Below are positions 38,653-59,229 of a stretch of 64,000 bases of DNA, in pieces. Position 1 is the first letter of the stretch; each line of letters opens with the position of its first letter. Under the pieces are notes generated by a model, which was not told the DNA's origin, did no database searches, and worked only from the letters and a program-made list of their open reading frames with translations. Source of the stretch: Octopus sinensis (taxonomy: Eukaryota). Position numbers and translations under genes: made by a program. The DNA is taken from assembly GCF_006345805.1 (NCBI RefSeq), contig NC_043024.1, forward strand, positions 15,686,001-15,750,000, read 5' to 3'.

Positions 38653-38772
38653 TGTGTGTGTTTGTGTGTGTAAGTTAATCTCTAAATGTATGTTTTTTTT
38701 TCCTATATGTCAACATTAATTGCCTCCCTTTATCATTATTCTATTTCTTTCTGTTTTGTTATATATTTGCAG

Positions 38773-38975
38773 CTCTAGCTAACCATGTTAGGTCCAATTT
38801 TATCAGTCAAGCTTCAAGTGACTCTGAACTAGCCAAACATAAAACAAAAGGTTATGATGACAGTATTGGCAATTTAATGGATGCCAAGAAAGACATAGAC
38901 GGTGTTTTATCGACAACTAAACTTCTACCCAATGTTCAGAATATGAAACAAAATGTTACAGAAAAATTAGGACTT
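38773..38975 (+). CDS. KCNH2: ERG channel exon (LANHVRSNFISQASSDSELAKHK...QNVTEKLGL)
   Basis: tttgcag acceptor, GTAAGT donor at 38976, 203 nt, phase 1-0, in frame with the previous exon. ASSDSEL matches hERG STSDSDL and NVTEK matches hERG HNVTEK. Confidence 0.93.
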
Positions 38976-39653: not shown

Positions 39654-39665
39654 ATATATATACAT

Positions 39666-39729
<64 letters not shown>

Positions 39730-39847: not shown

Positions 39848-40216
39848 TCATCATCATCATCGTTTAACATCCATTTTCCATGCTAGCATAGGTTGGACGG
39901 TTCAACCAGGGTCTGGGAAGCCAGGAGGCTGCACCAGGCTCCAGTCTGATCTGGCAGTGTTTCTACAGCTGGATGCCCTTCCTAACGCCAACCACTCCGT
40001 GAGTGTAGTGGGCGCTTTTTACATGCCAGGGGAGGCTGGCTGCAGCCACGATCGGTTGGTGCTTTTTACGTGCCACCAGCACGGAAGCCAGTCAAGGCAG
40101 CACTGGCATCGGCCACATTCAGATGATGCTTTTTACGTGCCACCAGCACAGTTATCACAACTACAATTTCCATTTGATTTTTATTTTGATGTTGTTGTAC
40201 TTGACTCAATAGGTCT
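39848..40216 (-). mobile_element. Family D retroposon
   Basis: Reverse-complement match. Confidence 0.87.
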
Positions 40217-40217
40217 C

Positions 40218-40261
<44 letters not shown>

Positions 40262-40928
40262 ATACATACACACTCACAGACATATATATGCTTCCCTCTT
40301 TCTCCCCATATATATATGTGTGTATGTATACATGTATATGGGAAATGTGATAGAAGTTAGATACACACATATGTGTGTGTGCCCATTACAAACAAATATG
40401 TGTGTACGTGTATGTATGCATGCACATATACATGTGTTTGTGTCTGATTATGTGTGTTTGTGTATGGCTTTAGATAGACAGATAAACTGATAGCTAAATA
40501 TAAGGAAACAGAAGTTTACCATATTTTTCTCTTCACAAGCGAATACAAGTTGTAGGAAACATTCTATATTTATCAAAGAAATCTAAAGAAAAACACGCAA
40601 CAAGAACAACAATGCCAAAAAAAAACAAAAAAGAAGACCATTTCCAAAGCTTCCAAAAGCCTTTCGGTGAAAATTGTTACATGTTTACTTTCGGCATCCT
40701 CTTGCATTTTTGTTTGCCCTTGTTTTTTTTGTGTTTCTTTTCATTCTTGGTTTGGTTGTTTCTCATTGCTTGAACCAATATTCAAGAAGCAACTCATGAG
40801 TGAATCTTAACAAACAAAGGAAAGAGAAAACTTTATCCAGTCAGGCTTTCTATTAGGACGGTCTCTGTGGCTTGTTTATCAATGGAAATCATGGAATACA
40901 TTTTCTGATTCAATGATAATCTGTTGAA

Positions 40929-41238
40929 GAAGGCGGCGAGCTGCCAGAAACGTTAGCATGCCAGGTGAAATGATCAGCAGTATTTCGTCTGTCTTTATGT
41001 TCTGAGTTCAAATTCTGCTGAGGTCGACTTTGCCTTTCATCTTTTCAGGGTCGATAAATTAAGTACCAGTTGCATACTGGGGTTGATCTAATTGACTGGC
41101 CCTGCCTCCCCAAAATTTTCAGGCCTTGTGCCAAGAGTAGAAAAGAATCATTAGTACGCCAAGGTTGACTTTGCCTTTCGTCCTTTTGGGGTCAATAAAT
41201 TAAGTACCAGTTGCATACTGGGGTCAATCTAATTAATA
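40929..41238 (+). mobile_element. SINE B type ii plus an adjacent core fragment
   Basis: Family B match. Confidence 0.85.
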
Positions 41239-41882
41239 TCTGTACTTATATGTGTGTGTGTGTGTGTATATATATATGTGTGTGTGTATGTATGTGTGTG
41301 TGTATGTATATATATATATATACATATATACACAAGCAAAAGGCCCCCCCCCCGTCCAATGGATAGCACTGAGTTGTCAAACATTTAAACCAAATTTTCT
41401 CAAAACATCTTGTCCGACCGTCCCTTAGGCCTCCCCTTTTAGAAACACTGATTTAACCTAAATTTGAGACACCAGCAAAAGAAGAAATAAAGACAGACTT
41501 TTTTTCTATTCCAAAGAAAAACGATTTTATTCACACAGATATGCAACCAAAGAGTTTAAAGTACCAGTAATGTTAAGGCTGTTGACTGGGAGAACACAAA
41601 TATGGTTTAAACAGTTCTTTTCATTAAAAAATAATTAAGCATGCTTTTATTTCAATAAAATTTTTGGTTTTGTTAAACGAAGTTAAGGCAAAAAAATACT
41701 TCTTGAGAAACCAAATAGTCTTTCCTTTCTTCATGCCACGTTTGAAGAAAATATCTCTTTTGCATCTTACTTTTTTGGTCTCTTAATTATACTGCACTTT
41801 GTGGCATTATTTCAAGCTGGCCAGCTTTTTTTGCGCAAACTGCACGTGCATTTTTCTCGTGTACATCTAGTATCGATCATAA

Positions 41883-42095
41883 CAGTTAATGTACTTGTGC
41901 ATACAAATGCATGTTCCCACGGCTTTATCGATTGCATTCTCACCTGGAATTGATTTTTGCAATTTTCTCAAGACTTATACACGCCCTGATACTGTCAGTA
42001 TCTACATATCAAATTTGAGCGCAATCAGATGGAGGATGCTCGAGATCCTAGAAGACGCACACACAGACAGACAGAACAGATTTTATATAATAGAT
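41883..42095 (+). mobile_element. Possible Helitron-type non-autonomous end (caaatttgagcgcaatc...cacagacagacag...ttttatataatagat)
   Basis: Resembles ACAG-microsatellite-bearing Helitron derivatives. Single copy here. Confidence 0.4.
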
Positions 42096-43171
42096 ATGTA
42101 TGTGTGTGTGTATGTATATACATACATATATATATATGTATAATATGTGTGTGTATACATATATATAATGCATGCTTCTTTGAGTTTCCATTGACCATAT
42201 CCACTCAACAAGGTTTTGGTTGGTCCAGGGCTATATTACAAAACACTTACCCCAGGTGCCATGCAGTGGAACTGAACATGAAGCCTTGTGATTGGGAAGC
42301 GAGCATCTTAATCACCCACCCACCCATGCCTGCTCCATGGGATAATATCTAGTACCAATGATTTTTATCAGGCAGAGGTATTATCCACAGTGGTGTCTCT
42401 CTGTTGAAGTTATTGGTAGCGTCTCTATATCCTTAGAGTGCCGCAAAACCCAAGCACACCAATTTTTATTGGGATATCTTAGCAGAATAGACCCACCTTC
42501 CCACTTAAAGAATGTGATAACACTCAAACCTATTCAAACCGGTCTTTCAATTCACTTACACTCCAGCACTTTAACCACATAGCCAATGGAATGTAGAAAT
42601 AATACTTATAATAGAATCACATTAGGGGAAAATAATTTTACGGGATTTGATTCTGTGAATGGCAGAGAAGATAACTTTATAGAAGCTCTTGTAATTGGCT
42701 AAGAATACAATCATATTTTACTTCGGCATTGGAATTCATTTCAAATGAATGGATTCGGTGGAAGAATAATTATTGATGATTCCAAATAACTGGGAAGGAT
42801 TCACTGGATTCAATACAGTATGACTTTTATGGAATACTTTATCCTCATTTCAAACCTGGCTAATTTCCAGAGTTGTTTTTATGCAGCTTACGGCTTGTTT
42901 CTTCTTAAAAGGATTCACTACTGTGTTCTGATGCAACAGAATGTGTGAGCAAGCCAATGAATGTGTGCTGCTGGTGGTGGTGGTAGTGGTGGCAGTGGGG
43001 CAATAATAATGCGTATATTAAACGCAATGCAAACAGCGGTATTCTTCACGCACAAAAGCTATACATTGGCTTTTATATTCTCAAGAATCACAGGAAATGG
43101 TTGACAAATTTCGGTATTGATGGAAACTCAATGTTTGAAACGTGATTCCTGTGTTTATTATGGTTAGAAGC

Positions 43172-43206
<35 letters not shown>

Positions 43207-43989
43207 TGTATGTGTGTGTGTATATATATATGTTTGTATGTGTGTGTGTATATATATATGTTTGTGTGTGTGTGTGTGTGTATATATAGTTTGTGTGTGT
43301 GTTGTGTATATATATGTTTGTGTGTGTATATATATGTTTGTATGTGTGTATGTATATATGTTTGTGTGTGTGTGGTATATATATATATGTTTGTATGTGT
43401 GTGTATATATATATTTGTGTGTGTGTGTATACATGTTTGTATGTGTGTGTGTATATATATATGTTTGTGTGTGTGTATATATATATGTTTGTATGTGTGT
43501 GTGTGTATATATGTTTGTATGTATGTGTGTGTGTATATGTTTGTATGTATGTGTGTGTATATGTTTGTATGTGTGTGTCTGTGTATATATGTCTATGTGC
43601 GTATATATGTTTGTCTGTGTGTGTATGCATATACATATCTGTATGGGTGTGTGTATTTATATGTATGGGTGTGTGTGTGTGTATATATTTTGGGGTTTTT
43701 ATTTATTTTTTCCTGGATTCATTACATTGGGCTGTGGCCATGCTGAAGCACCACCTCCAATAGTTTTTCTTTACCTATTTCTGTGTAGCACTTAATTCTG
43801 TCAACCTCGTTTTATTAAATGGCTAAGTTTCCCCTTGATATAAAAGGACCACAACTCAATGTGCTGTTTTATGCTGGTATAAACACAAACACACGGGTTT
43901 GTGTGTGTGTGTGTGTGTGTGTGTGATGTTGGATTCTCTCGTTGAAAACAACAAAATGAGTGTTTCATAAAAAAAATAAAAAAACCCAG

Positions 43990-44180
43990 ATGTTATGTTC
44001 TATGGACAAGCGTGAGTCTGTTGAGGCCTGATGGTGCCTTGCAAACCATTTTGGCAAATGGAACAAGTTGTGGACTCGGTTTGCTGGAGTTCATGTGGAT
44101 CAACTGCTACATGTTTTCTTGAGTGGACCGCAAGGCCTGCTTTGCTCCATGTCATGAAACCACAACAAGTAAAGTATTTA
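43990..44180 (-). pseudogene. Degenerate two-finger C2H2 fragment, probably a LINE ORF2 C-terminus
   Basis: ..SKAGLAVHSRKH...TCSICQ.VCKAPSGL..L.LVH with a frameshift. Confidence 0.55.
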
Positions 44181-44972
44181 GGCACAAGGTGTAGTGGTTA
44201 GGATGTTGCTCTTACAATTGTGAGATCATGGTTTCAATTCCTAGCCTGGGTGGTGTGTTGTGTTCTTGAGCAAATGTCTTCTAGTATAGCTTTGGCTAAC
44301 AGAGCCTTATGAATGAATTTGGTAAATGGAAACTGAAAGAAGCCTGTCATAGTTTGTATGTACATATTTATGTGTGTGTTTTGTGTCTGTATTTGTTCCC
44401 TGCAACTGCTTGAGAAATGGCAGTCAAGAGACTTATAGAGTGAGTATTAGGCTAAAAAATACAAGTCCTGGGGTTGATTTGTTTGAGTTAAGAACCCTTC
44501 AAGGCAGTGCCCCAGCATGGCCGCAGTCTAAATGACTGCAGCAAGGGAGAAGATAAAAAGATTAAAAAAAGACGTGTGTTTGGGGGGGGGGCTATCCAGG
44601 GAAATACTATTATCAACGGTGTGTAAATATATAACCCCTTCATTTGTGCCTAGTTTGATAAGTGCCGACCATGAAACTCTCAGCCCTTGAGTCACTCTGC
44701 TAACTTCTTGTGACTATTAATACTCACATACATATGTATATACATACACACACGCACACATATTCGTACATACATACACACACATACACACGTAAGTACA
44801 GACATGCATACAATCTCACACACATACATATATATACACACACACATACATACATACACATACATATATATACACACATATACATATACATACACATAGA
44901 TACATACATACTTAAGTGCCAACATGCAAAACACTTGGACCATGAGTCGCTTTGTTACTTCTATGAAATATT

Positions 44973-45180
44973 CTTTTCTACTCTAGGCACAAGGCCCGAA
45001 ATTTTTAGGGACGGGGGGCAGTCGATTAGATCGACCCAGTGCGCAACTGGTACTTAATTTATTTACTCTGAAAGGATGAAAGGCAAAGTCGACCTTGGTG
45101 GAATTTGAACTCAGAACATAAAGACGGATAAAATACCACTAAGCATTTTGCCCGGTGTGCTAACGCTTCTGCCAGCTCAC
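44973..45180 (-). mobile_element. SINE B type ii
   Basis: Reverse-complement match. Confidence 0.87.
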
Positions 45181-45185
45181 TAAAT

Positions 45186-45573
45186 CTGGAAGCACTCCGT
45201 TGGTTATGACGACGAGGGTTCCGGTTGATCCGAATCAACGGAACAGCCTGCTCGTGAAATTAACGTGTAAGTGGCTGAGCACTCCACAGACACGTGTACC
45301 CTTCACGTAGCTCTCGGGGATATTCAGCGTGACACAGAGAGTGACAAGGCTGGCCCTTTGAAATACAGGTACAACAGAAACAGGAAGTAAGAGTGAGAGA
45401 AAGTTGTGGTGAAAGAGTACAGCAGGGATCACCACCATCCCCTGCCGGATCCTCGTGGAGCTTTAGGTGTTTTCGCTCAATAAACACTCACAACGCCCGG
45501 TCTGGGAATCGAAACCGCGATCCTATGACCGCGAGTCCGCTACCCTAACCACTGGGCCATTGCGCCTCCACAA
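45186..45573 (-). mobile_element. SINE family E, full length, with 10-bp TSD
   Basis: TSD ctcactaaat at 45176-45185 and 45574-45583. tRNA-like A and B boxes. Confidence 0.92.
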
Positions 45574-45769
45574 CTCACTAAATATTCACAAATATTAATA
45601 AAAATATACATATGCTCATATTTTGAGTTTTATTTTTCCTATTTGCATCAACACACACACACATATATGAGTGAATGAACAAATAACAGAAGAGTACTCA
45701 ATACATTTATTGGGTGTTACATGTAGGGATCAAAAAAGTTTTGATTCATGCATAAGAATATATATATGT

Positions 45770-45802
<33 letters not shown>

Positions 45803-45803
<1 letters not shown>

Positions 45804-46205
45804 GGCGCAGGAGTGGCTGTGTGGTAAGTAGCTTTCATACCAACCTCATGGTTCTGGGTTCATTTCCACTGTGTGGCACCTTGGGCAAGTGTCTTCTACT
45901 ATAGCCTCGGGCCGACCAAAGTCTTGTGAGTGGATTTGGTAGACGGAAACTGAAAGAAGCCCGCCATATATATGTATATATATATATATGTGTATGTGTG
46001 TATGTGTTTGTGTGTCTGTGTTTGTTCCCCCACATCACTTGACAACCGATGCTGGTGTGTTTATGTCCCCGTAACTTAGCGGTTCGGCAAAAAGAAAACG
46101 ATAGAATAAGTATGAGGCTTATAAAGAATAAGTCCGGTGGTCGATTTGCTTGACTAAAGGCGGTGCTCCAGCATGGCCACAGTCAAATGACTGAAATGAG
46201 TAAAG
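45803..46205 (+). mobile_element. SINE family A, full length
   Basis: Family A match. Confidence 0.9.
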
Positions 46206-46216
46206 TAAGTAAGTAA

Positions 46217-46256
<40 letters not shown>

Positions 46257-46267
46257 GTGTGTGTGTG

Positions 46268-46298
<31 letters not shown>

Positions 46299-46319
46299 AC
46301 GTGTGTGTGTGTGTATGTG

Positions 46320-46350
<31 letters not shown>

Positions 46351-46413
46351 TGGTAAAACGGTAAGATAACAAAAGAAAGAAAGAGACCTCAATATTATGT
46401 AAATAGAGGAATT

Positions 46414-46651
46414 TATCTGTAAAATATATGTGACAATTATTCAATAGCCAAGATAAAACTCTGAGTTTCAGATGCTGAGGTGGAAATCCACACCACCGTC
46501 TCTTCGGTTATCTGGCCAGCTGAAAAATGCTATCTTTTTTCAGATGGCCAGATAACCGAAGAGATGGTGTTGTGGATTTCCACTTCGGCATCTGAAACTC
46601 AGAGTTTTTATCTTGGCTATTGAATAATTGTAACATATTATTTTATAGATA
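46414..46651. repeat. Near-perfect inverted repeat, about 115-bp arms with 8-nt loop
   Basis: 46414-46527 pairs with 46536-46651. Confidence 0.95.
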
Positions 46652-46791
46652 TATATGTATATATATATATATATATAAAAGTAGGTCCCGGGTTGAGTCG
46701 GGGTTAACCACAGTAAGTAAGGTACTCAATACATGTCAGAGTAAAATTAATTTATTTTAGAAAGGAACTTCTACAGGACTAGAACTGTTTC

Positions 46792-46855
<64 letters not shown>

Positions 46856-47003
46856 ATAGCAAAATTATCAATTTATGATCAGTTATGCTCTCTCTCTCAC
46901 AAACATACAAACAATATATATTATGGATTACATCATTCTCATCTGCTTGTATGTGTGTCTGTATAAAGATCTAGATAGATAAGCACATAGATTTGTGTGT
47001 ACG

Positions 47004-47081
<78 letters not shown>

Positions 47082-47559
47082 CATATATATATCTACATAC
47101 TTTGTTTCCATTTTAATGATTATACTAAAATGTTTGTGACTATAAATATGCTGGTTATTAGAATTTCTCAAATGTGTCTTCAGGGTTGGTAGTGCCAGAG
47201 ATTCCATTGCAAGAATATAAGCTGAAAAAAAAAAAAGATTTAAAACTATTTTTAGAAACATTTGAAAAAATCTCTTTCTATGTTCTTTTGTGAAGCAAGT
47301 CTTCTGTTTATTGCAATTACATCACTGTTCATTTTGTCTCTCTGTCTGTTTGTCCCTCTATCCATCCATTTATCCTTCATTCCATCTGTCTGTCCATCCA
47401 TTTATGTTTCTAGTTATCCACTTGTCTATTTATCTCTCTCTCTCTCTCTCTTTATCTATTTATTTATATTCATCTATCTGTCTGTCTATCTCTCTTTCCA
47501 TCTATCTATTTATCTCTCTCTCCCTCTGTCTGTCTGTCTCTTTCAATCTTTCTATCTCT

Positions 47560-47646
47560 CTACGTATCTAACTATCTCTCTGTCTATCTGACTATCTTTC
47601 TGTCTATCTGTCTGTCCAGCTATCCACTTCTCTATCTGTCTGTCTG

Positions 47647-47742
<96 letters not shown>

Positions 47743-47790
47743 GTCTGTCTGTCTGTCTGTCTATCTGACTATCTATCTATCTATCTGTCT
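47560..47790. repeat. (CTAT)n/(CTGT)n microsatellite within a longer CT-rich tract (about 47330-48290)
   Basis: Direct inspection. Confidence 0.93.
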
Positions 47791-47983
47791 GTCTGTCTAT
47801 CAATAAATTAAGTACCAGTTATGTACTGTGGTCGATGTAATCGACTTAATCCGTTTGTCCTTGTTTGTCCCCTCTGTATTTAGCCCCTTATGAGTAGTAA
47901 AGAAATCTATCTATCTATCTTCCCATCTATCTGTCTATCACTCTGTCTAATGTATTTGGTCAATCTGTCCTGTCTGCCTACCT

Positions 47984-48033
<50 letters not shown>

Positions 48034-48376
48034 TCTCTTTGCCTATCTGTCTGTCTCTTTTTTCATCTATCTCTCTGTTTCTCTGTGTATCTATGTATCT
48101 GACCATCCATTCCGCCCCCTATCCGTCACTCTATCCATCCACCCCACATTCTGTCCCTTCTGTTCATGTCTATGCCTGTCTATCCATATATCCATTTTGC
48201 CTACCTATCTACCTGTCCATCTGTCCTTCCTTCTCTCTCTCTATGTATCTGTCTGTTTGTCTATCTGCTTCCTTCATTCTTTCTTTTTCCTTTCTTTCAC
48301 ATCATATATATTGTAATGTATTGTAATATATGTCTACCCCAGTATGTATAATATATATGCATGTTTGTAGCCATTT

Positions 48377-48436
48377 GGGTCTGACGAGTTGCCTATGCAG
48401 CTAAGCGCTTTACAGGTGTGAAACCAGTGGTCACTC
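48377..48436 (+). ncRNA. Type I hammerhead ribozyme-like motif (degenerate)
   Basis: CTGACGA 48381-87, GAAA 48420-23, stem III CC/GG, GTC 48430-32, stem I GGGT/ACTC. Stem II is imperfect. Confidence 0.35.
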
Positions 48437-48652
48437 TCTGACCAGTCATAACAATCAATCCTCTAAATATATATGTATGTATATGTATATATGTACATGT
48501 ATGTATATGTATGTATATAACTTTGATAGGTTTCAGCCAGTATAGGCCCAGGCCATGTCTAACTCAGTAGCACCATATATGTATGTATATGTATTTTTGT
48601 GTATCTGTGTGTATGTATGTGTGTGTGTGTATGTATATATATATGTGTGGTA

Positions 48653-48694
<42 letters not shown>

Positions 48695-48698
48695 CGTG

Positions 48699-48915
48699 GA
48701 GAACCAGATCAGATTGGAGTCAGCTTCACCAGACCTCAGTCAAATCGTCCAACACATGCTAGCATGGAAAGCGGACGTTAAACGATGATGATGATATATG
48801 TATGAAGGTGTGTGGTCTAATGGTCGACCTCGGCGGAATTTGAACTCAGAACGTAGCGACAGACGAAATACCGCTAAGAATTTCGCATGGCATACTAACA
48901 TTTCTGCCAGCTTGC
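48699..48915. mobile_element. Family D tail (plus, 48699-48795) and SINE B head (minus, 48826-48915)
   Basis: Family matches. Confidence 0.8.
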
Positions 48916-49096
48916 AGCTTTATACATTTATATATTTACATATGCACACACTCACACACACATATATATGTAACATATACACACATCAGAGATGTCTTTT
49001 CATCATATGTCTATGTACTAAGACATTTTGTTTTTGTTTTTTTCTCTCAATATATATCACATTTTAAATTTCAATATTTTCTCTTTTTTCTTTTAG

Positions 49097-49141
49097 ATAT
49101 TCAGGCGTGGAGTCAAAAATGGCACAAATGGAGTAGATGAG
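49097..49141 (+). CDS. KCNH2: Candidate 45-nt in-frame exon of the ERG gene (IFRRGVKNGTNGVDE)
   Basis: ttttctcttttttcttttag acceptor, GAG|gtaaga donor, phase 0-0 matching both flanking exons, no stop in that frame. No hERG homology and no transcript evidence. Confidence 0.65.
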
Positions 49142-49419
49142 GTAAGATTCTGGTTCTTTTGTATTCTACAAAAAATGTTTCCTTTTTCTTTATTATTTTT
49201 TGTTTTAATTGTCCCCACTGCCCTTGGGAAACCCAGGTCAATTGATCAACCCAAGTATTACAAGCTGAAAGGACTTTGAGGTCGATCCATCAGCCCGATG
49301 AAACAAACGTTGGGAATGGTTGGTTTTAAAGTGTAATAGCCAATCAGAGATCATCTTTTAGTATATTTATTTTTTTGTTTTGTTTTGTTTTTTCACAGAA
49401 GATTTCATAATACCCTTTT

Positions 49420-49612
49420 ATTCTTTTATATGTTTGTCATTTGACTGTGGCCATGCTGAAGGGCTTTAGATGAAGAAATCGACCCCAGGACTCATTTGTT
49501 GTAAGCCTAGTGCTTATTCTATCGGTCTCTTTTGCTGAACTGCTAAGTTATGGGGACATAAACATACCAACATCAGGTGTCAAGTGATGATGGGGCAAAC
49601 AGACACACACAC
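49420..49612 (-). mobile_element. SINE A tail half, 280 bp downstream of the 45-nt exon
   Basis: Reverse-complement match. Confidence 0.82.
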
Positions 49613-49978
49613 ACATACATAAATATATATATGTATATATATATATATATATATACTACACAGTAATCCTTCACCATATCACGGTTTATTATTGAAGCTT
49701 ATGTCAGTTCCTCTGTGGTGTTGTTTTACATTTATAATAAAATAAATATAAACAAATTAGAAAAATAATACAAAAAGATATACAGTACAGTAATTGCGTC
49801 AAAGCTGAAGTTAAGCCACAATATTTAATGCTCTCTGTTATATTTATATTAAAAATTTTTTAAATTACTGGAGTTTAGGGAGCAGTTATTTTAAAACATA
49901 TGCTATTTCAAATTGGCTAATTCATTTGAACTTATCCGCTTGATCTGTTGTAAATAATAGAAGGTCTAATTATTAAGT

Positions 49979-50197
49979 CAGTGGTTTTCAACCAGGGTTC
50001 CGCAGAACCTTAGGGTTCCGCCAGTACAGTCCAGGGGTTCCACAAGAAGTTATAAAACTGCTAAAATCGGCAGTAATTTTTAATTCTCCTGTGCAGATAT
50101 GTGTGCATAAGACTATTAAATTATTGCACAGAGGTTCCTCGAGCCAGTGGAATGTTTCCTTGGGGTTCCACTCCAGCAAATGGTTTGAAAAGCCCTG
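49979..50197. mobile_element. hAT (Charlie/Buster-type) MITE
   Basis: TIRs cagtggttttcaacc / ggtttgaaaagccctg and a perfect 8-bp TSD TATTAAGT (49971-78, 50198-205). Confidence 0.92.
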
Positions 50198-50265
50198 TAT
50201 TAAGTAAATAAATCATATTAGTCTTTCATGTTAACAATGTATATCTTAAATTAAACATATACATA

Positions 50266-50638
50266 TTGGAAGCACTCCGTCGGTTACAAACGACGAGGGT
50301 TCCGGTTGATCCGAATCAACGGAACAGCCTGCTCATGAATTAACGTGTAAGTGGCTGAGCACACCACAGAAAGTGTCCTTATTATAGTTCTCGGGATATT
50401 CAGCGTGACACAGAGGGTGACAAGGCGGCCCTTGAAATACAGGTACAACAGAAAACAGGAAGTAAGAGTGAGAGAAAGTTGTGGTGAAAGAGTACAGCAG
50501 GATCACCACCATCCCTACCAGAGCCTCGTGGAGCTTTAGTGTTTTCGCTCAAAACACTCACAAACACCTGGAATCGAAACCGCGATTCCTATGACCGCGA
50601 GTCCACTGCCCTAACCACTAGGCCATTGCGCCTCCACA
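50266..50638 (-). mobile_element. SINE family E, full length
   Basis: Matches 45186-45573. Confidence 0.9.
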
Positions 50639-51152
50639 CCCACATATATCTACATACTCTCACAGAACATCACATTACACACATACACAGTCCTACCTAC
50701 AATCCACATACACGCACACATATACACATCCAAACATACATACATACACACACACATACCCATACACACATGTACATACACATACATTCCTACATCAACA
50801 TATACAAATACCTACAAAATTAACTCTATAAATAAGTTTAGGTCTACAATTGAACAAATAAGCTAGATATGAGTTAAATAATTATGTTCCTAACATTTTT
50901 ATTAAATAAGAACACAAAACAACAATTTATCCATATCCACAAACATACTCGTAAAGATACATTCAATTCTCTATATGTATCGCTATTCGACAAACACACA
51001 TATCTATACATAACCACAGACAACACAAATTTATACATACACACATATGCACATGCATTTATAAATATACCCATACATCCACATGCATAAACTAGTACCT
51101 ACATATATTATAATATATTCTCCACCATATTATTATAAATACATACACATAT

Positions 51153-51318
51153 AGGCGCAGGAGTGGCTGTGGTAAGTAAGTAGCGTGCTAATCAACACAT
51201 GGTTCCAGGTTCAGCCACTGCGTGGCATCTTGGGCAAGTGTCTTCTGCTATAGCCCTGGGCCGACAATACTTATGAGTGGATTTGGTAGACGGAAACTGA
51301 AAAGAAGCCTGTCGTATA

Positions 51319-51363
<45 letters not shown>

Positions 51364-51555
51364 GTCCCCCTAGCATTGCTTGACAACGATGCTGGTGTGT
51401 TTACGTCCCCGTCACTTAGCGATTCGGCAAAAGAGACCGATAGAATAAGTACTGGGCTTACAAAGAATAGTCCCGGGGTCGATTTGCTCGACTAGAGGCG
51501 GTGCTCCAGCATGGCCGCAGTCACATGACTGAAACAATTAAAAGAGTAAAGAGTA
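51153..51555 (+). mobile_element. SINE family A flanked by a 92-bp direct duplication
   Basis: 51061-51152 matches 51571-51662 with one mismatch. Confidence 0.88.
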
Positions 51556-52018
51556 TATGCATATGCATATATAAATATACCCATACATCCACATGCATAA
51601 ACTAGTACCTACATATATTATAATATATTCTCCACCATATTATTATAAATACATACGCATATGTATATATATATTCTCTAAGAGTCCTTATATACATACA
51701 TTTACACGTATACATAAACTAAACCAAATACTATGCACATACAAACCTACTTTATATCCCTAAACCTAACCCTAATACATATACATATGCATATACATAC
51801 AAACATATACAGGTATATATGGAATATACATATATGTACACATGTATATATAACCCCACAGGTAATTATATATCCCAATCTAAATGAGTAAAAACAGAAA
51901 ATCAATATAAGTATAAGCTAGACTACATGCATATATATACATACATGTACACACACATACATACGCACACATACATACCTATATATATATTATATATATA
52001 TATATATGGTGTGTGTGT

Positions 52019-52106
<88 letters not shown>

Positions 52107-52661
52107 ATGTATGCTGTGCGTGAGAAGACCCGGCAAGACTAGTGAGGCCATAACCCGTGTGGCCCCTACTGGGACGTAGTCAGTCCACATGTGTACCTTC
52201 CTTCTTGTGACATTTGTGAAGACTGTTGAGGCAAGTGAAAATCAAACCAAATCAAAATAGATGAACAATCAATGGAATTTGTACCTTTGTGGTACCAGTG
52301 CCGGTGGCACATAAGAAAACCATCCAAACGTGGCCGTAGCCAGTACGGCATCAACTGGCCTCTGTGCTGTGGGCATGTAACAAACACCTTCCGATCGTGG
52401 CCGTTCGCCAGCCTGTCTGGCAACTGTGTCGGTGGCACATAAAAACACATCCGAGCGTGGCCGTTCGCAGTCATCTGGCACCTGTGTCGGTGGCACATAA
52501 ATCACCCACTACACTCTCGGGGTGGTTGGCATTAGGAAGGGCATCCAGCTGTAGAAACACTGCCAGATCTGACTGGCCTGGTGAAGCCTTCGGGCTCCCC
52601 AGACCCCAGTTGAACCGTCCAACCCATGCTAGCATGGAAAGCGGACGTTAAACGATGATGA

Positions 52662-52665
<4 letters not shown>
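52107..52665 (+). mobile_element. Longest family D copy, with internal ~50-60-bp tandem units
   Basis: Repeated gtg(t/c)cggtggcacataa..ccatccgagcgtggccgt units, then the D tail. Confidence 0.87.
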
Positions 52666-52701
<36 letters not shown>

Positions 52702-53810
52702 AGAGTTTATGAAAAAACAAAAGACGAAGACAGGTGGTGTACAAAACAAGCAGATGTATTAGTATAACGCATATATATATATATATATATATAGATATAT
52801 AGATATATATATACACATATATACATACACATACATACATATACATATCATCACATACACAAATCTACACTATGATCTATCCATAAGATCTAATATACAT
52901 AATTAATAACATAAAATAATAATAATTGAAAACTAACACATACATGTACATAAATACATACATATATCCATCTATACATATACGAATCCAAAAGTGTACT
53001 CAAGTGGGTGTGTACATGCACACATACTTTATACAGAACTTTATACTAAATAACAAGTGTAAATATATATCAATATACATGAACAAATGGATATATCTAC
53101 AAACAAAAACAAGTACATCAAGAACATACATATATGTACACACATATCGACACCTATGTATATAAACTTATTCACATACATTGTATATGTATGCAAATAT
53201 GTTTATATATATATATAGGTGTCGAGCAAATCGACCCCAGGACTTATTCTTTGTAAGCCTAGTACTTATTCTATTGGTCTATTTTTCCAAACTGCTATGT
53301 TCTGGGGACGATGGATATAAGTATGTATACCTATATTACATATGTGTGTGTATATGAATATAAGTAAATATATACCTATATTACAAGTGTATATACAAAT
53401 ATACACACTTACATTTACATATTTACATATTACCACACTCATTCAGCTACACACACACAACACATATATGCATATATGTACATACATATGTGTATACACT
53501 TATACATGCATATACATACATACACACATTATATATATATTCATACTCACTCATAGAAGATATATAATTGATTTCTATACATAGAAATTTACTGAATTTT
53601 GGAATTAATTTCACAGAATAAAAACATTTCATAAAGCAATTTCCATTTAATATTTTCAATGTTACCATTTTTAGAAGAATGTACTTTTCTCTGGAGTTCA
53701 TTTCATTATTTTTTTTCATTCTTTATTTTTCTATATCTTAATATAGCTTTTAATTATCATCATCATTATCATCACCATAATCATCATCATTATCATTACT
53801 ATTTTTTTTA

Positions 53811-54625
53811 AGGCAGCGAGTAGGCAGAATCCTTAGCATGCTGGGCAAAATACTTTGTGGTATTGTGTCCATCTTTATGTTCTGAGTTCAAATTCCACTG
53901 AGGTCAGCTTTACCTTTTATCCTTTCCAAGTACTAGTTGAGCAATAGGGTCAATGTAATTGATTTAAACCCCCTCCCCCAAAATTTGAAACCATTATCAT
54001 TGTTATTATTATTGAGTAAGGGAGTAATGCATACCATTAAAGTGACACTGGGGTAAAATATACGAAGCCCAGTATACCCTTCATAACTACCCGTCTGATA
54101 AGGGTACACTAGGCACATGCATTACAACTATATGGCCGCGACATGGTGATTTATATCAAGATAAACAGCGCATGACCTTGCAGGTGGGGCTCAGTTAGAA
54201 TTTTCTTCAGGTTGAGTAGTCCATCCTGCTCAAAAGGCCCTTGAATAAGGTTTGTTTAAAGCAAATTAAGGTGAAATATTTGCTGTAGCCCATCTTTTAT
54301 ACCAAGACAAAACAATGTACATGATAACACTTCCAGTCAATTAAGAGCAGAAGCCATGAGAGCCACTGCCTGGTACTACATCAGGGCATTTATGGAGCAG
54401 AATATTTGCTGTAGCCCATCTTTTACACCAAGATAAAATATGTACATGATAACACTTCGAATCAGTTAGCAGAATTGTTAGCATACCAGGCAAAATGCAT
54501 AACAGCATTTTGTCCGTCTTTACATTCTGAGTTCAAATTCTACTGTGGTCGACTTTGCCTTTCACCCACTTGGGGTTGATAAATTAGATACCAGTGGAAC
54601 ACTGGGGTCAATGAATTTGAGCTTT
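53811..54625. mobile_element. SINE B (53811-53990), internally deleted family C (54013-54388, minus) with partial duplication, SINE B (54475-54625)
   Basis: Family matches. Confidence 0.8.
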
Positions 54626-54651
54626 GTGACTTTAGTTAAAAGAACTATTAT

Positions 54652-54985
54652 TATTGTTGAAGATGTTACACTTTACCCATTATTGTGATGTTGTAGACTG
54701 GAGATTTTGAGTACCAGGAGGTTTTCACTGTCTTTCAAGTCACAACAAGGACCTCAGACAAACAATACTTTATGCAATATGCATGCAGTTCCAAATGATG
54801 CCAATTTTTGCAATATGTGAAGATTGCAGGCTATTTCTAAAGTGCGCAGATGTTTCTTCAGGTTGGATCATATCAAACCCAAGAACAACTTCTATGTTTG
54901 ACTCTTGCAGTTGCCACATCTTGGCGATGTCATCTCTCAGATCTCCATATTTGTGGACCTTTTCTCTTTTTTTTCTTCCATAGTA
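54652..54985 (-). mobile_element. Third divergent R4/Dong-clade 3' end
   Basis: EKVHKYGDLRDDIAKMWQLQESNIEVV...LKKHLRTLEI...LQKLASFGTACILHKVL, with 3'UTR ending (AAT)n. Confidence 0.82.
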
Positions 54986-55166
54986 TTGTATACCTTGTGT
55001 ACTTCCCTACTTTTAATGAATACTGTATATGCTTTTCTTTTGGTTTTTATTACCATTTCATTATATGTAAAATCCCACACTTTATGTCTGTCTCTGTATT
55101 GTCTCACTCATCTTTTGCCCTGGTGGCAAGTAAAGAAAATCATTATTACTATTATTATCATTATTG

Positions 55167-56108
55167 AGACAGCGAGCTGGCAGAAACATTAGCACCAGGC
55201 GAAATGCTTAGCAGTATTTCATCTGCCACTACGTTCTGAGTTCAAATTCCACCGAGGTCAACTTTTGCCTTTCATCCTTTTGGGTCGATAAATTAAGTAC
55301 CAGTGAAGTCAATGTAACTGACTAGTCGTCTCCCCATTAAATTTGAGGTCTTGTGCTTCCCATAAAATGGATCATCATCATCATCATCATCATTATTATC
55401 ATCATTATTATCATTATTATTATTATTATTATGGCGTCGAACTGGCAGAACTGTAAGAACTTAGCAGCATTTTGTCTGTTTTACATTCTGAATTCAAATT
55501 CTGCCAAGGTTGACTTTTGGAGTCAATGAAATAAGTACCAGCCGAGCGCAGGGTCGATGTGATTGACTAGTCCCCTCCCCCCAAATTTCGAGCCTTGTGC
55601 CTATAGTAGAAAGAATTATTATTATTATTATTGAGTGAGACATCAGTGCATGCCATCAAAGTGACACTGGGGTAAAATATACCCAGTATACCCATCATGA
55701 CTACCCATCTGATAAGGGTACAGTAGGCACATGCATCAAAAACCATATGTGCATGACATGGTGATCTCATATCAAGGTAAGCAGCACATGACCTTGCAGG
55801 TGGGGCGCTGTTAGAATTTTCTTCAGGTTGAGTAGCCCATCCCGCTCAAAAAGTTCCTGAATAAGGATTGTTTAAGGATGTTGAAAGAACCACCCATGTT
55901 TCCAGAGGTGAATTATTCAAACCCCAAAGAATCCCTCTCAACATACGGCTATGATGCTCCCCCACTACTTCTGCTCATGGTCAGAAATGCACATATCGTC
56001 AGCCACTAAGGGACATGCTCAACTGGTTACGGTCAAACAACTGACAAGCAAATCTGTGGTATTGAGCAGAATATTTGCTGTAGCCCAACTTTTATACCAA
56101 GACAAAAC
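55167..56108. mobile_element. Two SINE B type ii (55167-55370, 55431-55615, plus) and family C (55633-56108, minus)
   Basis: Family matches. Confidence 0.83.
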
Positions 56109-56112
56109 ATTA

Positions 56113-56173
<61 letters not shown>

Positions 56174-56302
56174 CCTTATTATTTCCCTTAAGTGAATACG
56201 CCACATATCATTACCAAAATGTAATTTTCCACAATTAATCCTATCCTCTACTACCCCCCACACGCACACACTACATTCCAGTAGATAATTCCAGTAAGAA
56301 TT

Positions 56303-56310
56303 TATAAAAG
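56303..56310 (+). promoter_or_regulatory. TATA box-like TATAAAAG upstream of a candidate alternative first exon
   Basis: Canonical octamer in a non-repeat island, 50 nt before ATG 56353. The motif is common by chance in AT-rich DNA. Confidence 0.25.
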
Positions 56311-56352
56311 TGCACAAGGAATGGAGTGGTGCAGAGTGGAGAGGTGCATGGT

Positions 56353-56385
56353 ATGGTGCAGGGGTTCGATAGATTCGTTGCTGCA
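56353..56385 (+). CDS. KCNH2: Candidate alternative first coding exon (MVQGFDRFVAA) splicing onto VLSLGADV
   Basis: ggtATGg context, in-frame TAA at 56305, phase-0 GTAAGT donor at 56386. Purely predicted. Confidence 0.3.
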
Positions 56386-56677
56386 GTAAGTAGCATGGTA
56401 GACAGTTTTAAGTGTAAAACAGTGTTTTCTGAAATTATAAGATGTCGCACATTCCATTAACTTTGTCCCTTGGCGGTAGTCAGACGAACGGTTCTCCACC
56501 ATTCAATTAATTATACAGCCTTCCACTCCCCATGGCCACCCCCCACTGCCACCACCTTCACTGTTATCTCCGTATCTCCTCTGTGGGTGGGTTTTATATA
56601 TTTATAAACCTGCTCTACCCTCATCTCCCTCTTTCTCATTGCTTGAGTGACAGGGTTTGTATTCGTTTTAATTGGAT

Positions 56678-56712
<35 letters not shown>

Positions 56713-56968
56713 ATTTCCATATATACTCACATATACACAGGTACACGCACACATACAATATGCACGTGTATATATATATATATATTATATATATATATAT
56801 GCATACACACATATATATCTGTATCAACACAGAAGCACACACAATATTCAGTACTATTTTAAGTTTGTGAACACTTTTGTTCAAAAACAAGAGCATCATA
56901 TAATGTGTGTGTGTGTCTGTGTAGATAAATATATATATTTGTATACGTGTAGGTTTATATATGCGTGC

Positions 56969-57006
<38 letters not shown>

Positions 57007-57183
57007 TAATAATAATATTAGGGAGTAAATCCAAACTTACAGGGAAAAATTAGATTTAGGATTTTTATCTCTAATTTAATATATTTATATATATATATAT
57101 GTATATATATGCATGTTTGTGTATATAAATATATGTACACATGTATGTATATAAATATGTGTCTATGTGTGTGTGTGTATATA

Positions 57184-57668
57184 TACTCTTTTACTCTTTT
57201 ATTTGTTTGAGCCATTTGACTGTGGCCATGTTGGAACATTGCCTTTAGTCGAGCAAATCGACTCTGGGACTTATTCTTTGTAAGCCCAGTACTTATTCTA
57301 TCAATCACTTTTGCTGAACCGCTAAGTTACACTAAGTTACAGAGACGTAAAGGATTTAAATTTCAGGTATGTGGATGCATGACAAATAGGCTTGTCCCAT
57401 GGACTCATGGATCTTCTCATATCCTACCTTGTCATGAAGGCAGTGAGGTGGTAGAAGCGTTAGCACGCGGGGCGAAATGCTTAGCGGTATTTCATCTGCT
57501 GTTACGTTCTGAGTTCAAATTCTGCCGAGGTCGACTTTGCCTTTCATCCTTTCGGGATCGATAAATTAAGTACCAATTACACACTGGGGTCAATGTAATC
57601 GACTTAATCCCTTTGTCTGTCCTTGTTTGTCCTCTCTGTGTTTAGCCCCTTGTGGGTAGTAAAGAAAT
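57184..57668. mobile_element. SINE A tail (minus, 57184-57330) and SINE B type i (plus, 57441-57668)
   Basis: Family matches. Confidence 0.85.
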
Positions 57669-57726
57669 GAGATAGATTTGTCCTATAGACTCATGAAAAT
57701 TTGTCATAGGCAACTGAGTCAAACTG

Positions 57727-58095
57727 TTATTACCTCCATCTTAGCGATGGTGGAGGTATTGTTTTCAGTTGTACTTGTTTGTTTGTCCATGGATAAGATA
57801 TCTCAAGAACTGCTTAATGGATTTGGATGAAACTTTCAGGGATGTTTGTCCTTGTGACTGGCACAAACTGATTAGATTTTAGGATTGATCTGGTATCAGA
57901 CAAGGATTCTGGATTATTTTTCCGTTTTTTTTACTTAATTTTTAAGAGCAGTTGGGTTCATTTTTAGTATTCTCATTTGTGAGAGCAGTCGAGTTTATTT
58001 CAGATATTCTCATTTTAAAAATCATCTCTGGCTAATGGTTCAGAGGACGTTGGTGTTGTGTTGGTGGAGGTTTGTGCTCTCTGAGTGCTCTTATT
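57727..58095 (+). mobile_element. HINE-like element, second copy
   Basis: acctccatc..gatggtggaggt 5' hairpin and ggtggaggtttgtgctctctgagtgc 3' end. Homologous to 13257-13622. Confidence 0.62.
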
Positions 58096-58146
58096 TGTTT
58101 TTGTGTCTTTATTTATAACAAAATCAATTTTAACATAATATATATA

Positions 58147-58181
<35 letters not shown>

Positions 58182-58182
58182 G

Positions 58183-58480
58183 CACACCTTTCAATGCCAT
58201 GTATGCCAGAAAGTTTGCAATTCTAACGGAGGCATCAAAAGACATTTTAAGATCCACAAACCTCAGAACTTATCGGCAGCTCTTGGTGGTCCAAATCAGA
58301 TGAGCAATGTATGTGGGTGTCTTTCAGAACATTGTCTGGTTTAAAAAGCCACATCAGATGCCATGATGGTTCAAAGGTGTTGGTACAGGAGGTGGTCAGA
58401 TTCTGCATAAGGAGTAGACAACAATCCAACCATCCCAGTATGGAAAGTGAACGTTAAACAATGATGATAATGATAATGAT
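58183..58480 (+). mobile_element. LINE 3' end encoding two C2H2 fingers and ending in a family-D-like tail
   Basis: FQCHVCQKVCNSNGGIKRHFKIH and (frameshifted) NVCG..FRTLSGLKSHIRCH, then tccaacc..ccagtatggaaagtgaacgttaaacaatgatgat. Confidence 0.7.
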
Positions 58481-58797: not shown

Positions 58798-59229
58798 GTA
58801 CTTTCTCTTGGAGCTGACGTCATTCCAGAGTACAAACTGCAATCATCTCGCATCCACAGGTGCACAATTCTTCATTATTCTCCGTTCAAAGCTGTTTGGG
58901 ACTGGATTATTCTTCTCCTTGTGATCTACACAGCAATATTTACTCCCTATGTTGCAGCTTTTCTTTTAAGTGAGGAACGTAAAAAGGAAGCTTATCAGAG
59001 CGTGCAAAACTCTTATCAAGATCCTCTCACCATTATAGACCTTATTGTCGATGTGATGTTTATCATCGACATTCTTATCAACTTCCGTACCACGTATGTC
59101 AATAAAAACGATGAAGTAGTCAGCCATCCAGGGAAAATTGCTGTTCATTATTTTAAGGGTTGGTTTCTCATTGATGTGGTGGCAGCCATCCCATTTGACT
59201 TGTTACTGTTCGGTTCAGAAACTGATGAA
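58798..59229 (+). CDS. KCNH2: ERG channel exon encoding pre-S1, S1, S2, S3 ([15 protein letters not shown]...FKAVWDW...[11 protein letters not shown]...[28 protein letters not shown])
   Basis: Near-identical to the hERG exon 6 peptide. tttgcag acceptor, GTAAGT donor at 59230, 432 nt, phase 0-0. Confidence 0.98.

What the first reader, a model, noticed from the sequence alone, without database searches (positions are those of the whole stretch)
49077..49147. 45-nt in-frame exon inserted exactly at the NVTEK|VLSLGADV junction of ERG
Seen: strong acceptor (ttttctcttttttcttttag), GAG|gtaaga donor, 15 open codons (IFRRGVKNGTNGVDE), and phase 0-0 like its neighbours. Known: in hERG this junction is continuous (exon 5/6 boundary), and the segment just before S1 (KIKER region) tunes activation gating. 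Inference: this is a lineage-specific cassette or constitutive microexon adding RR/K and DE charges at that spot, or the second exon of an internally initiated isoform. It is bracketed by inverted SINE A copies (45803+ and 49420-) that could loop it out.
Basis: partly seen in the sequence, partly recalled or inferred. Interest (0 to 1): 0.75.

Follow-up and report, generated by a model that had tools for sequence, protein, structure and literature searches.

The report
Conserved 45-base ERG channel microexon
A 45-base stretch in the middle of a 20-kb intron of a mollusc (presumably cephalopod) ERG potassium-channel gene is very probably a real, conserved mini-exon that adds 15 amino acids just ahead of the voltage sensor. 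It is an ordinary kind of feature, and RNA data are still needed to show when it is included.

Summary
Window 49097-49141 (+) is a 45-nt open, phase 0-0 segment (IFRRGVKNGTNGVDE) with an 18/18 pyrimidine tract plus AG and a GAG|GTAAGA donor. It lies between the ERG exon ending ...NVTEKLGL (38975) and the S1 exon starting VLSLGADV (58798).

It is more than chance. In 128 kb (both strands) it is the only non-repeat candidate of this quality. In genomic contigs of a deeply diverged relative (L010/L011) the orthologous intron is 3.4 kb instead of 19.8 kb. The only alignable island there is this exon: 41/45 nt identical, AG and GT kept, three synonymous changes and one N/S change. Synonymous sites of the two flanking exons are saturated (pS 0.71-0.83), against 0.29 in the microexon.

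Two gastropod orthologous introns hold no counterpart, so the exon looks lineage-specific.

Best reading: a genuine coding microexon that lengthens the flexible N-linker before S1, most likely a regulated cassette. No transcript data were reachable, so alternative versus constitutive use is unresolved. The inverted-SINE looping idea is not supported. This is a new member of a known kind, of moderate interest.

The parts
38772..38975 (+). ERG N-linker exon, ending ...LLPNVQNMKQNVTEKLGL (phase 0), followed by the donor GTAAGT at 38976-38981
   Evidence: Translation. It is orthologous to ...NMKQNVSEKVAQ of gastropods and ...HNVTEKVTQ of hERG. It is conserved in L010 657-857 at 76% nt, pN 0.079.
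49077..49096 (+). 3' splice site of the microexon: 18/18 pyrimidines followed by AG
   Evidence: The AG and a T-rich tract are kept in L010/L011. There is no TGC motif in the 50 nt upstream in either species (printout).
49097..49141 (+). 45-nt microexon, IFRRGVKNGTNGVDE, phase 0-0
   Evidence: It is single-copy in the window. The orthologue is L010 2379-2423 / L011 2399-2443 = IFRRGVKNGTSGVDE: 41/45 nt identical, with 3 synonymous third-position changes and 1 N/S change. It is the only alignable island in the intron.
49142..49147 (+). 5' splice site GTAAGA (exon side GAG|)
   Evidence: L010/L011 have GAG|GTGAGT. Similarity stops after position +6.
58798..59229 (+). ERG exon encoding the pre-S1 segment and S1-S3 ([15 protein letters not shown]...FGSETDE), acceptor ...ttttgcag, donor GAA|GTAAGT
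   Evidence: 75% identical to hERG 377-520 by tblastn. phmmer against PDB hERG chains gives E 2.7e-70. Pfam Ion_trans. Helices predicted at residues 112-146, 159-183 and 194-224 of the 227-aa construct.

Best explanation
Window 49097-49141 is a genuine protein-coding microexon of the ERG (Kv11-type, KCNH2/6/7-like) potassium-channel gene. It is spliced between the N-linker exon (...NVTEKLGL) and the exon that starts VLSLGADV and encodes S1-S3. Inclusion inserts 15 residues (IFRRGVKNGTNGVDE: three basic, two acidic, three glycines) into the cytoplasmic linker between the eag/PAS domain and the voltage sensor, about 28 residues before the S1 helix. Skipping keeps the frame.

Shown: the exon anatomy, its rarity by chance, its conservation, and purifying selection at both protein and nucleotide level.

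Inferred:
- It is most likely a regulated (alternative) cassette rather than constitutive. My split is cassette ~0.55, constitutive ~0.3, other ~0.15.
- Its effect would be to lengthen this tether and change its charge, and so shift activation/deactivation gating. This is by analogy with the electrostatic effect of the KIKER cluster and of proximal N-linker deletions in hERG.
- It arose in the lineage of the window species after the split from gastropods.
For: Anatomy: an 18/18 pyrimidine tract plus AG, GAG|GTAAGA, 45 nt, the only open forward frame, phase 0-0 with both neighbours, and an in-frame TAG immediately upstream.

Rarity: it is the only non-repeat candidate of this quality in 128 kb, and it is not part of any repeat.

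Conservation: between the window (38-60 kb) and L010, blastn and tblastx find exactly three islands: the upstream exon, this exon and the S1 exon. Exon identity is 41/45 nt, AG and GT are kept, and flanking intron identity is 46% ungapped, about background. Nei-Gojobori values are pS 0.29 and pN 0.03 for the microexon. The flanking exons have pS 0.83 and 0.71 (saturated) and pN 0.08 and 0.009. Third-position differences are 3/15 against 98/207, Fisher one-sided p=0.034. Reduced synonymous change is a known hallmark of regulated exons (my own knowledge).

Position: the insertion point equals hERG Q376|V377, the exon 5/6 junction. The region is predicted without regular structure, at low confidence. 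Charge changes in the nearby hERG N-linker shift activation V0.5 by tens of mV (PMC7580876).

Lineage specificity: there is no homologue and no strong in-phase candidate in the 48.5-kb and 29.8-kb orthologous introns of Gigantopelta and Elysia. No cassette appears in about 250 ERG proteins.

No non-coding RNA signal: no Rfam hit on the exon and fold z-score 0.55.
Against: No transcript evidence of any kind was obtained. The three protein searches returned no cephalopod-like mRNA-derived ERG sequence with or without the insert. The search tool appears to list only targets up to about 1.75 times the query length, so long annotated isoforms were out of reach.

Conservation rests on one other lineage: two closely related assemblies, L010 and L011, of unknown species. 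They could in principle be a paralogue rather than an orthologue.

The third-position pattern does not by itself fix the strand. One antisense frame shares the same wobble positions and is also open. The strand call rests on the splice signals and on frame compatibility with ERG.

The excess of synonymous conservation is based on 15 codons.

Strong splice sites, and the loss of the otherwise universal ...KVAQ end of the upstream exon (here ...KLGL), fit constitutive inclusion as well as regulated inclusion.

The gating effect is purely inferred, and the AlphaFold fragment model is poor (mean pLDDT 53).
Confidence: 0.6

Rival explanations
1. It is a constitutive exon. In this lineage every ERG mRNA contains the 15 residues, so the pre-S1 linker has been permanently remodelled.
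For: The acceptor and donor are very strong and the exon is deeply conserved. The upstream exon has lost the ...EKV[AT]Q end that is otherwise invariant from flatworms to mammals. It ends ...EKLGL in both the window and L010. The microexon ends ...GVDE, restoring a V-x-[EQ] residue pattern next to VLSLGADV. phmmer even aligns RGVKNGTNGVDE with hERG ERTHNVTEKVTQ.
Against: Synonymous divergence far below that of the neighbouring constitutive exons is more typical of regulated exons. The Q/E at exon ends is largely explained by the AG|GT splice consensus. Similarity of the microexon to the upstream exon end is no better than shuffles (p about 0.2). There are no RNA data.
Confidence: 0.3
2. It is used only as the second exon of an internally initiated, PAS-less (ERG1b-like) transcript whose first exon lies elsewhere in the 10-kb upstream half of the intron.
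For: This intron is the classical site of ERG1b-type alternative first exons. Examples are mammalian 1b (P0067), insects, horseshoe crabs, and gastropods. The gastropod case is the Batillaria model P0002 and a homologous ATG-containing exon in the Elysia intron, L015 ...23665. The anchored similarity of the microexon to the last 15 residues of hERG1b (RVRRAVRISSLVAQE) is nominally unusual (p about 0.005, uncorrected for 11 comparisons).
Against: tblastx and blastn find no second conserved coding island in the intron between the window and L010. The gastropod 1b-like exon ends are not significantly similar to the microexon. Nothing prevents the canonical upstream donor from using this acceptor.
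Confidence: 0.07
3. It is not an exon. It is either a conserved non-coding element (intronic enhancer, splicing regulator, small RNA or antisense feature) or a chance pseudo-exon.
For: There is no transcript evidence. One antisense frame is also open and equally conserved. Only one other lineage was compared.
Against: The conserved block is bounded exactly by the AG and by GT[AG]AG. Its frame and phase match ERG. Differences fall at third codon positions. There is no Rfam family on it and no thermodynamic structure signal. The antisense strand has no conserved splice signals (L010 lacks an AG on that side). The chance expectation is low.
Confidence: 0.05

Closest known systems
ERG1b-type alternative first exons (KCNH2 exon 1b in intron 5; analogous exons in insects, horseshoe crabs and gastropods)
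   Same: They lie in the same intron and join the same acceptor, giving ...|VLSLGADV. They change what lies N-terminal of the voltage sensor and thereby tune ERG gating kinetics.
   Different: 1b exons carry their own promoter and start codon and replace the PAS/eag domain. The element here has no Met codon, has an in-frame stop just upstream, and has a conserved acceptor. It is therefore an internal exon that adds 15 residues and removes nothing.
Centruroides sculpturatus KCNH6-like isoforms X1/X3 versus X2 (XP_023211953/55 vs XP_023211954)
   Same: A short in-frame insertion (17 aa, VRFLTDRWRNVSQRYNQ) at exactly the same protein position, between ...GEKVAQ and VLSLGADV.
   Different: It is made by an alternative downstream 5' splice site that extends the upstream exon by 51 nt (L013 7936-7986, CAG|GTACGT vs CAG|GTAACG), not by a separate exon. 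The sequence is unrelated, and the support is a gene model only.
Neural microexons controlled by SRRM3/4 (eMIC domain)
   Same: Short, frame-preserving, deeply conserved, with nucleotide-level constraint, and lying in a surface or linker region of a neuronal membrane protein.
   Different: 45 nt exceeds the strict limit of 27 nt. The UGC motif expected next to the 3' splice site is absent in both species (printout). Tissue specificity is unknown.
hERG proximal N-linker charge cluster KIKER (K362-R366)
   Same: A cluster of charged residues a few residues N-terminal of the exon 5/6 junction that tunes activation electrostatically (PMC7580876). The microexon places RR, K and DE at the corresponding place.
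   Different: KIKER is part of a constitutive exon and is vertebrate-specific. The window gene has NMKQNVTEK there. No functional data exist for the microexon.

Membership tests
ERG / Kv11 (KCNH2/6/7, unc-103, sei) channel gene | S1-S3 segment homologous to ERG rather than to EAG/ELK | tested here: met
   phmmer against PDB gives hERG chains at E 2.7e-70, versus KCNH1/KCNH5 at about 1e-29. tblastn gives 75% identity to hERG 377-520. Pfam Ion_trans.
ERG / Kv11 (KCNH2/6/7, unc-103, sei) channel gene | Conserved N-linker motif NV[ST]EK... immediately before the exon starting VLSLGADV, with a phase-0 intron at that point | tested here: met
   The same intron position is seen in scorpion, Gigantopelta and Elysia loci.
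ERG / Kv11 (KCNH2/6/7, unc-103, sei) channel gene | eag/PAS domain, GFG pore and CNBHD in the same gene | not testable with these tools
   Those exons lie outside the 64-kb window. Only N-linker exons and the S1-S3 exon are present.
Internal coding microexon (cassette or constitutive) | Functional-looking 3' and 5' splice sites, length 3n, open frame in phase with both neighbours | tested here: met
Internal coding microexon (cassette or constitutive) | Cross-species conservation confined to the exon and its splice sites, with a coding-type substitution pattern | tested here: met
Internal coding microexon (cassette or constitutive) | Length limit: at most 51 nt (broad definition) / at most 27 nt (strict definition) | tested here: inconclusive
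   45 nt meets the broad definition and fails the strict one.
Internal coding microexon (cassette or constitutive) | Presence in mature mRNA (junction reads, cDNA) | not testable with these tools
   No RNA-seq was available. Protein searches returned no transcript-derived sequence from the lineage. The metagenome DNA scan was empty.
Alternative cassette exon | Both inclusion and skipping isoforms exist | not testable with these tools
   Only indirect evidence: low synonymous divergence.
SRRM4/eMIC-dependent neural microexon | UGC-containing enhancer between the polypyrimidine tract and the AG | tested here: not met
   No TGC in the 50 nt upstream of the AG in the window or in L010 (printout).
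ERG1b-type alternative first exon | Own start codon, with the reading frame entered without an acceptor | tested here: not met
   There is no ATG in the exon, the in-frame codon just upstream is TAG, and the AG/pyrimidine tract is conserved.
Exonised transposable element (SINE-derived exon) | The exon sequence belongs to a repeat family | tested here: not met
   Window 49040-49200 has no other copy in the window. The nearest repeats end at 48926 and start at 49476.

The most novel reading that the evidence does not exclude
The microexon marks a lineage-wide (coleoid or cephalopod) remodelling of the ERG pre-S1 linker. The ancestral ...EKVAQ|VLSLG junction has been replaced by ...EKLGL + IFRRGVKNGT(N/S)GVDE + VLSLG. 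The exon's unusually low synonymous divergence would then reflect an embedded regulatory RNA element for splicing control or A-to-I editing. The single amino-acid difference between the lineages is an A/G change, AAT(N) vs AGT(S) at 49128, the kind that editing mimics. Alternatively, the exon is the internalised remnant of an ancient ERG1b-type exon end (RR.V[RK]......V.E).
Probability: 0.15. Interest if true: 0.5.

Novelty: new member of a known kind. Interest (0 to 1): 0.35.

Why it matters
ERG channels set repolarisation and firing adaptation. Their gating is known to be tuned by what sits between the eag/PAS domain and the voltage sensor: ERG1a versus 1b, the KIKER charges, and proximal-linker deletions.

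A conserved, lineage-specific 15-residue charged and glycine-rich insert at exactly that point gives a simple, directly testable handle on how this lineage may diversify ERG currents by splicing. It is also an annotation point, because a 45-nt exon in a 20-kb repeat-rich intron is easily missed.

It does not reveal a new mechanism. Alternative exons at this junction are common across animals.

Tried and rejected
1. Transcript evidence through protein databases. Three homologous-protein searches and one exhaustive representative search gave no mRNA-derived ERG from the lineage. The listed targets never exceeded about 1.75 times the query length, so full-length annotated isoforms were probably excluded. 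The exact look-up of the window's own S1-exon ORF found nothing.

2. A degenerate DNA scan of JGI metagenome contigs for the exon gave 0 hits.

3. Non-coding RNA: Rfam gave only a sub-threshold mir-297 match in a CA-repeat at 48919-48984. The fold z-score was 0.55.

4. Editing-complementary or looping RNA: the best duplexes between the exon and +/-1.5 kb of intron are no better than for shuffled exons, in the window and in L010.

5. Inverted-SINE looping: rejected as a specific mechanism.

6. Origin by duplication of the upstream exon's 3' end, prompted by the phmmer alignment: not better than shuffles (peptide p about 0.2, nucleotide p 0.07).

7. Homology to gastropod 1b-like exon ends: not significant.

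8. The scorpion 'cassette' turned out to be an alternative 5' splice site.

9. Species identification of the window and of the Logan runs through paper searches for run accessions and for the SINE sequence gave nothing. Literature searches for cephalopod ERG isoforms or microexons gave nothing specific.

10. The AlphaFold2 fragment model was too poor for a fold search.

Full report
**What is there**

- A 20-nt tract TTTTCTCTTTTTTCTTTTAG (49077-49096) precedes a 45-nt segment (49097-49141) that translates to IFRRGVKNGTNGVDE.
- The segment is followed by GTAAGA, and the exon side of the donor is GAG.
- The other two forward frames contain stops.
- The in-frame codon just upstream is the TAG of the acceptor, so the frame can only be entered by splicing.

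The gene context was checked as follows.
- The exon at 38772-38975 ends ...LLPNVQNMKQNVTEKLGL|GTAAGT. This is the orthologue of ...NMKQNVSEKVAQ in gastropods and ...HNVTEKVTQ in hERG.
The coordinates 38975, 49097, 49141 and 58798 are right, and all junctions are phase 0.
- phmmer against PDB sequences gives hERG at E 2.7e-70, against about 1e-29 for KCNH1/5. Pfam gives Ion_trans. The gene is an ERG-type KCNH channel.
- The taxon could not be verified. Named best relatives are molluscan: Batillaria, Sinanodonta, Elysia, Gigantopelta. The closest relatives are unnamed Logan genomic contigs.

**Is it more than chance?**

I enumerated all AG...GT[AG]AG segments of 21-150 nt that are open, of length 3n, and preceded by at least 14/18 pyrimidines.
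- The 19,822-nt intron has two in phase 0. The other one (39281-39349) lies inside a SINE copy.
- Over the whole window on both strands there are four. Three are copies of the same SINE-derived ORF, and only the candidate has at least 17/18 pyrimidines.
- The candidate region is single-copy in the window.

**Comparative evidence, the decisive result**

A short junction query retrieved P0121, the prokaryote-style ORF call over the upstream exon in another organism. Its contigs L010 (4.9 kb) and L011 carry the upstream exon, the S1 exon and the whole intron between them. That intron is only 3.4 kb there, against 19.8 kb in the window.

- tblastn of the 15-mer finds IFRRGVKNGTSGVDE at L010 2379-2423 and L011 2399-2443.
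- blastn of window 38000-60000 against L010 gives exactly three hits: the upstream exon (77.5%), window 49057-49146 (81% over 90 nt) and the S1 exon (82.5%). tblastx gives the same three and nothing else.
- In the alignment the exon is 41/45 identical. The AG and GT[AG]AG are kept and similarity ends at donor position +6. The 50 nt on each side are 46% identical ungapped.
- The four differences are GGA/GGT, GGC/GGA and GTA/GTC (synonymous) and AAT/AGT (N/S).

The Nei-Gojobori estimates show how deep the comparison is.

| Exon | pS | pN |
|---|---|---|
| Upstream exon | 0.83 | 0.079 |
| S1 exon | 0.71 | 0.009 |
| Microexon | 0.29 | 0.029 |

Synonymous sites of the two flanking exons are saturated, while the microexon's are not. 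Third-position differences are 3/15 in the microexon against 98/207 in the flanking exons (Fisher one-sided p=0.034). The element has therefore been kept, in frame and with its splice sites, over a divergence at which everything else in the intron has been randomised. It is more constrained at the nucleotide level than its constitutive neighbours.

Three caveats apply.
- The species of L010/L011 is unknown.
- Paralogy cannot be formally excluded, although no second ERG-like ORF of this lineage appeared in the searches.
- One antisense frame shares the same wobble positions and is also open. The strand assignment therefore rests on the splice signals and on frame compatibility with ERG.

**Lineage specificity**

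Among about 250 ERG proteins retrieved, PAS-containing forms from flatworm, annelid, gastropods, arthropods, amphioxus and vertebrates all read ...EKV[AT]Q|VLSLGADV. The window and L010 share ...EKLGL instead.

The orthologous introns of Gigantopelta aegis (48.5 kb) and Elysia chlorotica (29.8 kb) contain no match to the peptide beyond 4-6 residue chance hits, and no strong in-phase candidate. Over that evolutionary distance a negative result for 15 residues is weak, but it points the same way as the EKVAQ to EKLGL change.

**What is known at this junction**

In KCNH2 the first five exons encode the N-terminus. ERG1b starts from a promoter and a single exon in intron 5, replacing exons 1-5 (PMC9113952).

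The retrieved proteins show that such alternative N-termini joined to VLSLGADV are widespread.
- Primate and amphibian 1b: ...RVRRAVRISSLVAQE|.
- Insects: ...RKE|.
- Horseshoe crabs.
- The gastropod Batillaria.

I also found the homologous ATG-containing exon inside the Elysia intron, ending ...RYNRRRSAIAE|gtaagg at L015 23665.

The only internal insertion at this point is in the scorpion Centruroides: isoforms X1/X3 against X2, 17 aa. Its locus shows that this is an alternative downstream 5' splice site, not a separate exon. The present element differs from all of these. It has no start codon and has a conserved acceptor, so it is an internal exon.

**Mechanism**

Shown: inclusion adds 15 residues (net charge +1; RR, K, D, E; three Gly) at the position equivalent to hERG Q376|V377, about 28 residues before the predicted S1 helix. 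Skipping preserves the frame.

An AlphaFold2 model of the 227-residue three-exon construct is poor (mean pLDDT 53). It predicts S1-S3 helices and no regular structure for residues 1-106, including the insert. This fits a flexible linker but is not strong evidence.

Inferred: in hERG, charge changes in the KIKER cluster a few residues upstream shift activation V0.5 by tens of mV, and deletion 141-380 shifts it by about -20 mV (PMC7580876). A charged, flexible insert here would plausibly retune activation and deactivation.

Regulated inclusion is favoured by the nucleotide-level constraint. Constitutive inclusion is favoured by the strong splice sites and by the decay of the ...KVAQ motif in the upstream exon. 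I put cassette at about 0.55, constitutive at about 0.3, internal-promoter-only use at about 0.07 and not an exon at about 0.05-0.08.

It does not look like an SRRM4/eMIC-type microexon. It is 45 nt long, and there is no UGC near the acceptor in either species (printout).

**The SINE idea**

The ~330-nt SINE at 45780-46110 (+) does have an inverted partial copy at 49513-49652 (-). But there are about 20 copies in both orientations in the window. The relative's 3.4-kb intron has no inverted repeat of 40 nt or more and no alignable SINE. Exon-to-intron duplex energies are no better than for shuffled exons. There is nothing specific here.

**Verdict**

The core interpretation, a real lineage-specific in-frame microexon at the pre-S1 junction of ERG, is strongly supported by comparative genomics. 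Its mode of use and its effect remain to be shown by RNA and electrophysiology. In kind it is ordinary: a new member of the class of short conserved exons in ion-channel linkers, at a junction already known as an isoform hot spot. No description of it was found in the searchable literature.

Noticed in passing
window 38964-38975 (and L010 846-857): The upstream exon ends ...EKLGL in the window and in the relative. Every other PAS-containing ERG retrieved, from flatworm to human, ends ...EKV[AT]Q or a near variant. This is a lineage-specific change of an otherwise nearly invariant motif, right next to the microexon's insertion point.
   Followed up: partly
window 49128 (second base of codon 11 of the microexon): The only amino-acid difference between the two lineages is AAT (Asn, window) against AGT (Ser, L010/L011). 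This is an A/G difference of the kind that A-to-I editing mimics in coleoids. No local or +/-1.5-kb complementary structure was found.
   Followed up: partly
window 39281-39349 (+); also 22781-22864 (-): Copies of a SINE carry an AG...GTAAG-bounded open 3n segment (SFDCGHAG...). The copy at 39281-39349 is 69 nt and in phase 0 within the same ERG intron, so it is a potential exonisation site. It is not conserved in L010.
   Followed up: partly
window 45780-46110 and about 19 other places (e.g. 633-974, 7440-7744, 27194-27503, 39362-39666, 51134-51449, 59532-59853): A SINE-like family of about 330 nt (starting GGCGCAGGAGTGGCTGTGTGGTAAG...) with an internal microsatellite has about 20 copies in both orientations in 64 kb. 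Long (TA)n/(CA)n-type arrays fill much of the introns.
   Followed up: partly
window 38976-58797 versus L010 858-4296: The orthologous intron is 19.8 kb in the window and 3.4 kb in the relative. In two gastropods it is 29.8 and 48.5 kb. The difference in the window is largely repeats.
   Followed up: no
L015 about 23,300-23,665 (Elysia chlorotica, intron before the S1 exon): An unannotated ATG-containing exon ends ...RYNRRRSAIAE|gtaagg. It is homologous to the N-terminus of the Batillaria model P0002 (...RFNKRRSAVVE|VLSLG). Gastropods therefore appear to have an ERG1b-like, PAS-less isoform from the same intron as mammals.
   Followed up: partly
L013 7936-7986 (Centruroides sculpturatus KZ495923.1): The 17-aa insert of KCNH6-like isoforms X1/X3 arises from a second 5' splice site 51 nt downstream of the canonical one (CAG|GTACGT vs CAG|GTAACG). 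This is a different route to an insertion at the same protein position.
   Followed up: yes
proteins P0320, P0326, P0328 (teleost kcnh6a): Teleost KCNH6a models read ...EKVTQVTQ|VLSLGADV (P0326: ...EKVTHVTQ|). This is a 3-residue repeat of the junction motif at the same spot.
   Followed up: no
window about 33121-33540 (+): A further ERG N-linker exon (PGRHKSFKLRLPSIRKDFRAPK...), matching hERG 157-170 and Elysia KLRLPSIRRD. Its exact boundaries were not determined. No PAS-domain exons lie in the 33 kb upstream.
   Followed up: no
window 48919-48984 (-): A sub-threshold Rfam match to mir-297 (32 bits against a gathering score of 90) falls in a CA/TA-rich low-complexity stretch. It is almost certainly chance.
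   Followed up: no
tool behaviour: the search for homologous proteins listed only targets up to about 1.75 times the query length (395 aa for a 227-aa query, 1018 for 582, 70 for 68). This probably hid full-length ERG isoforms of the lineage.
   Followed up: partly
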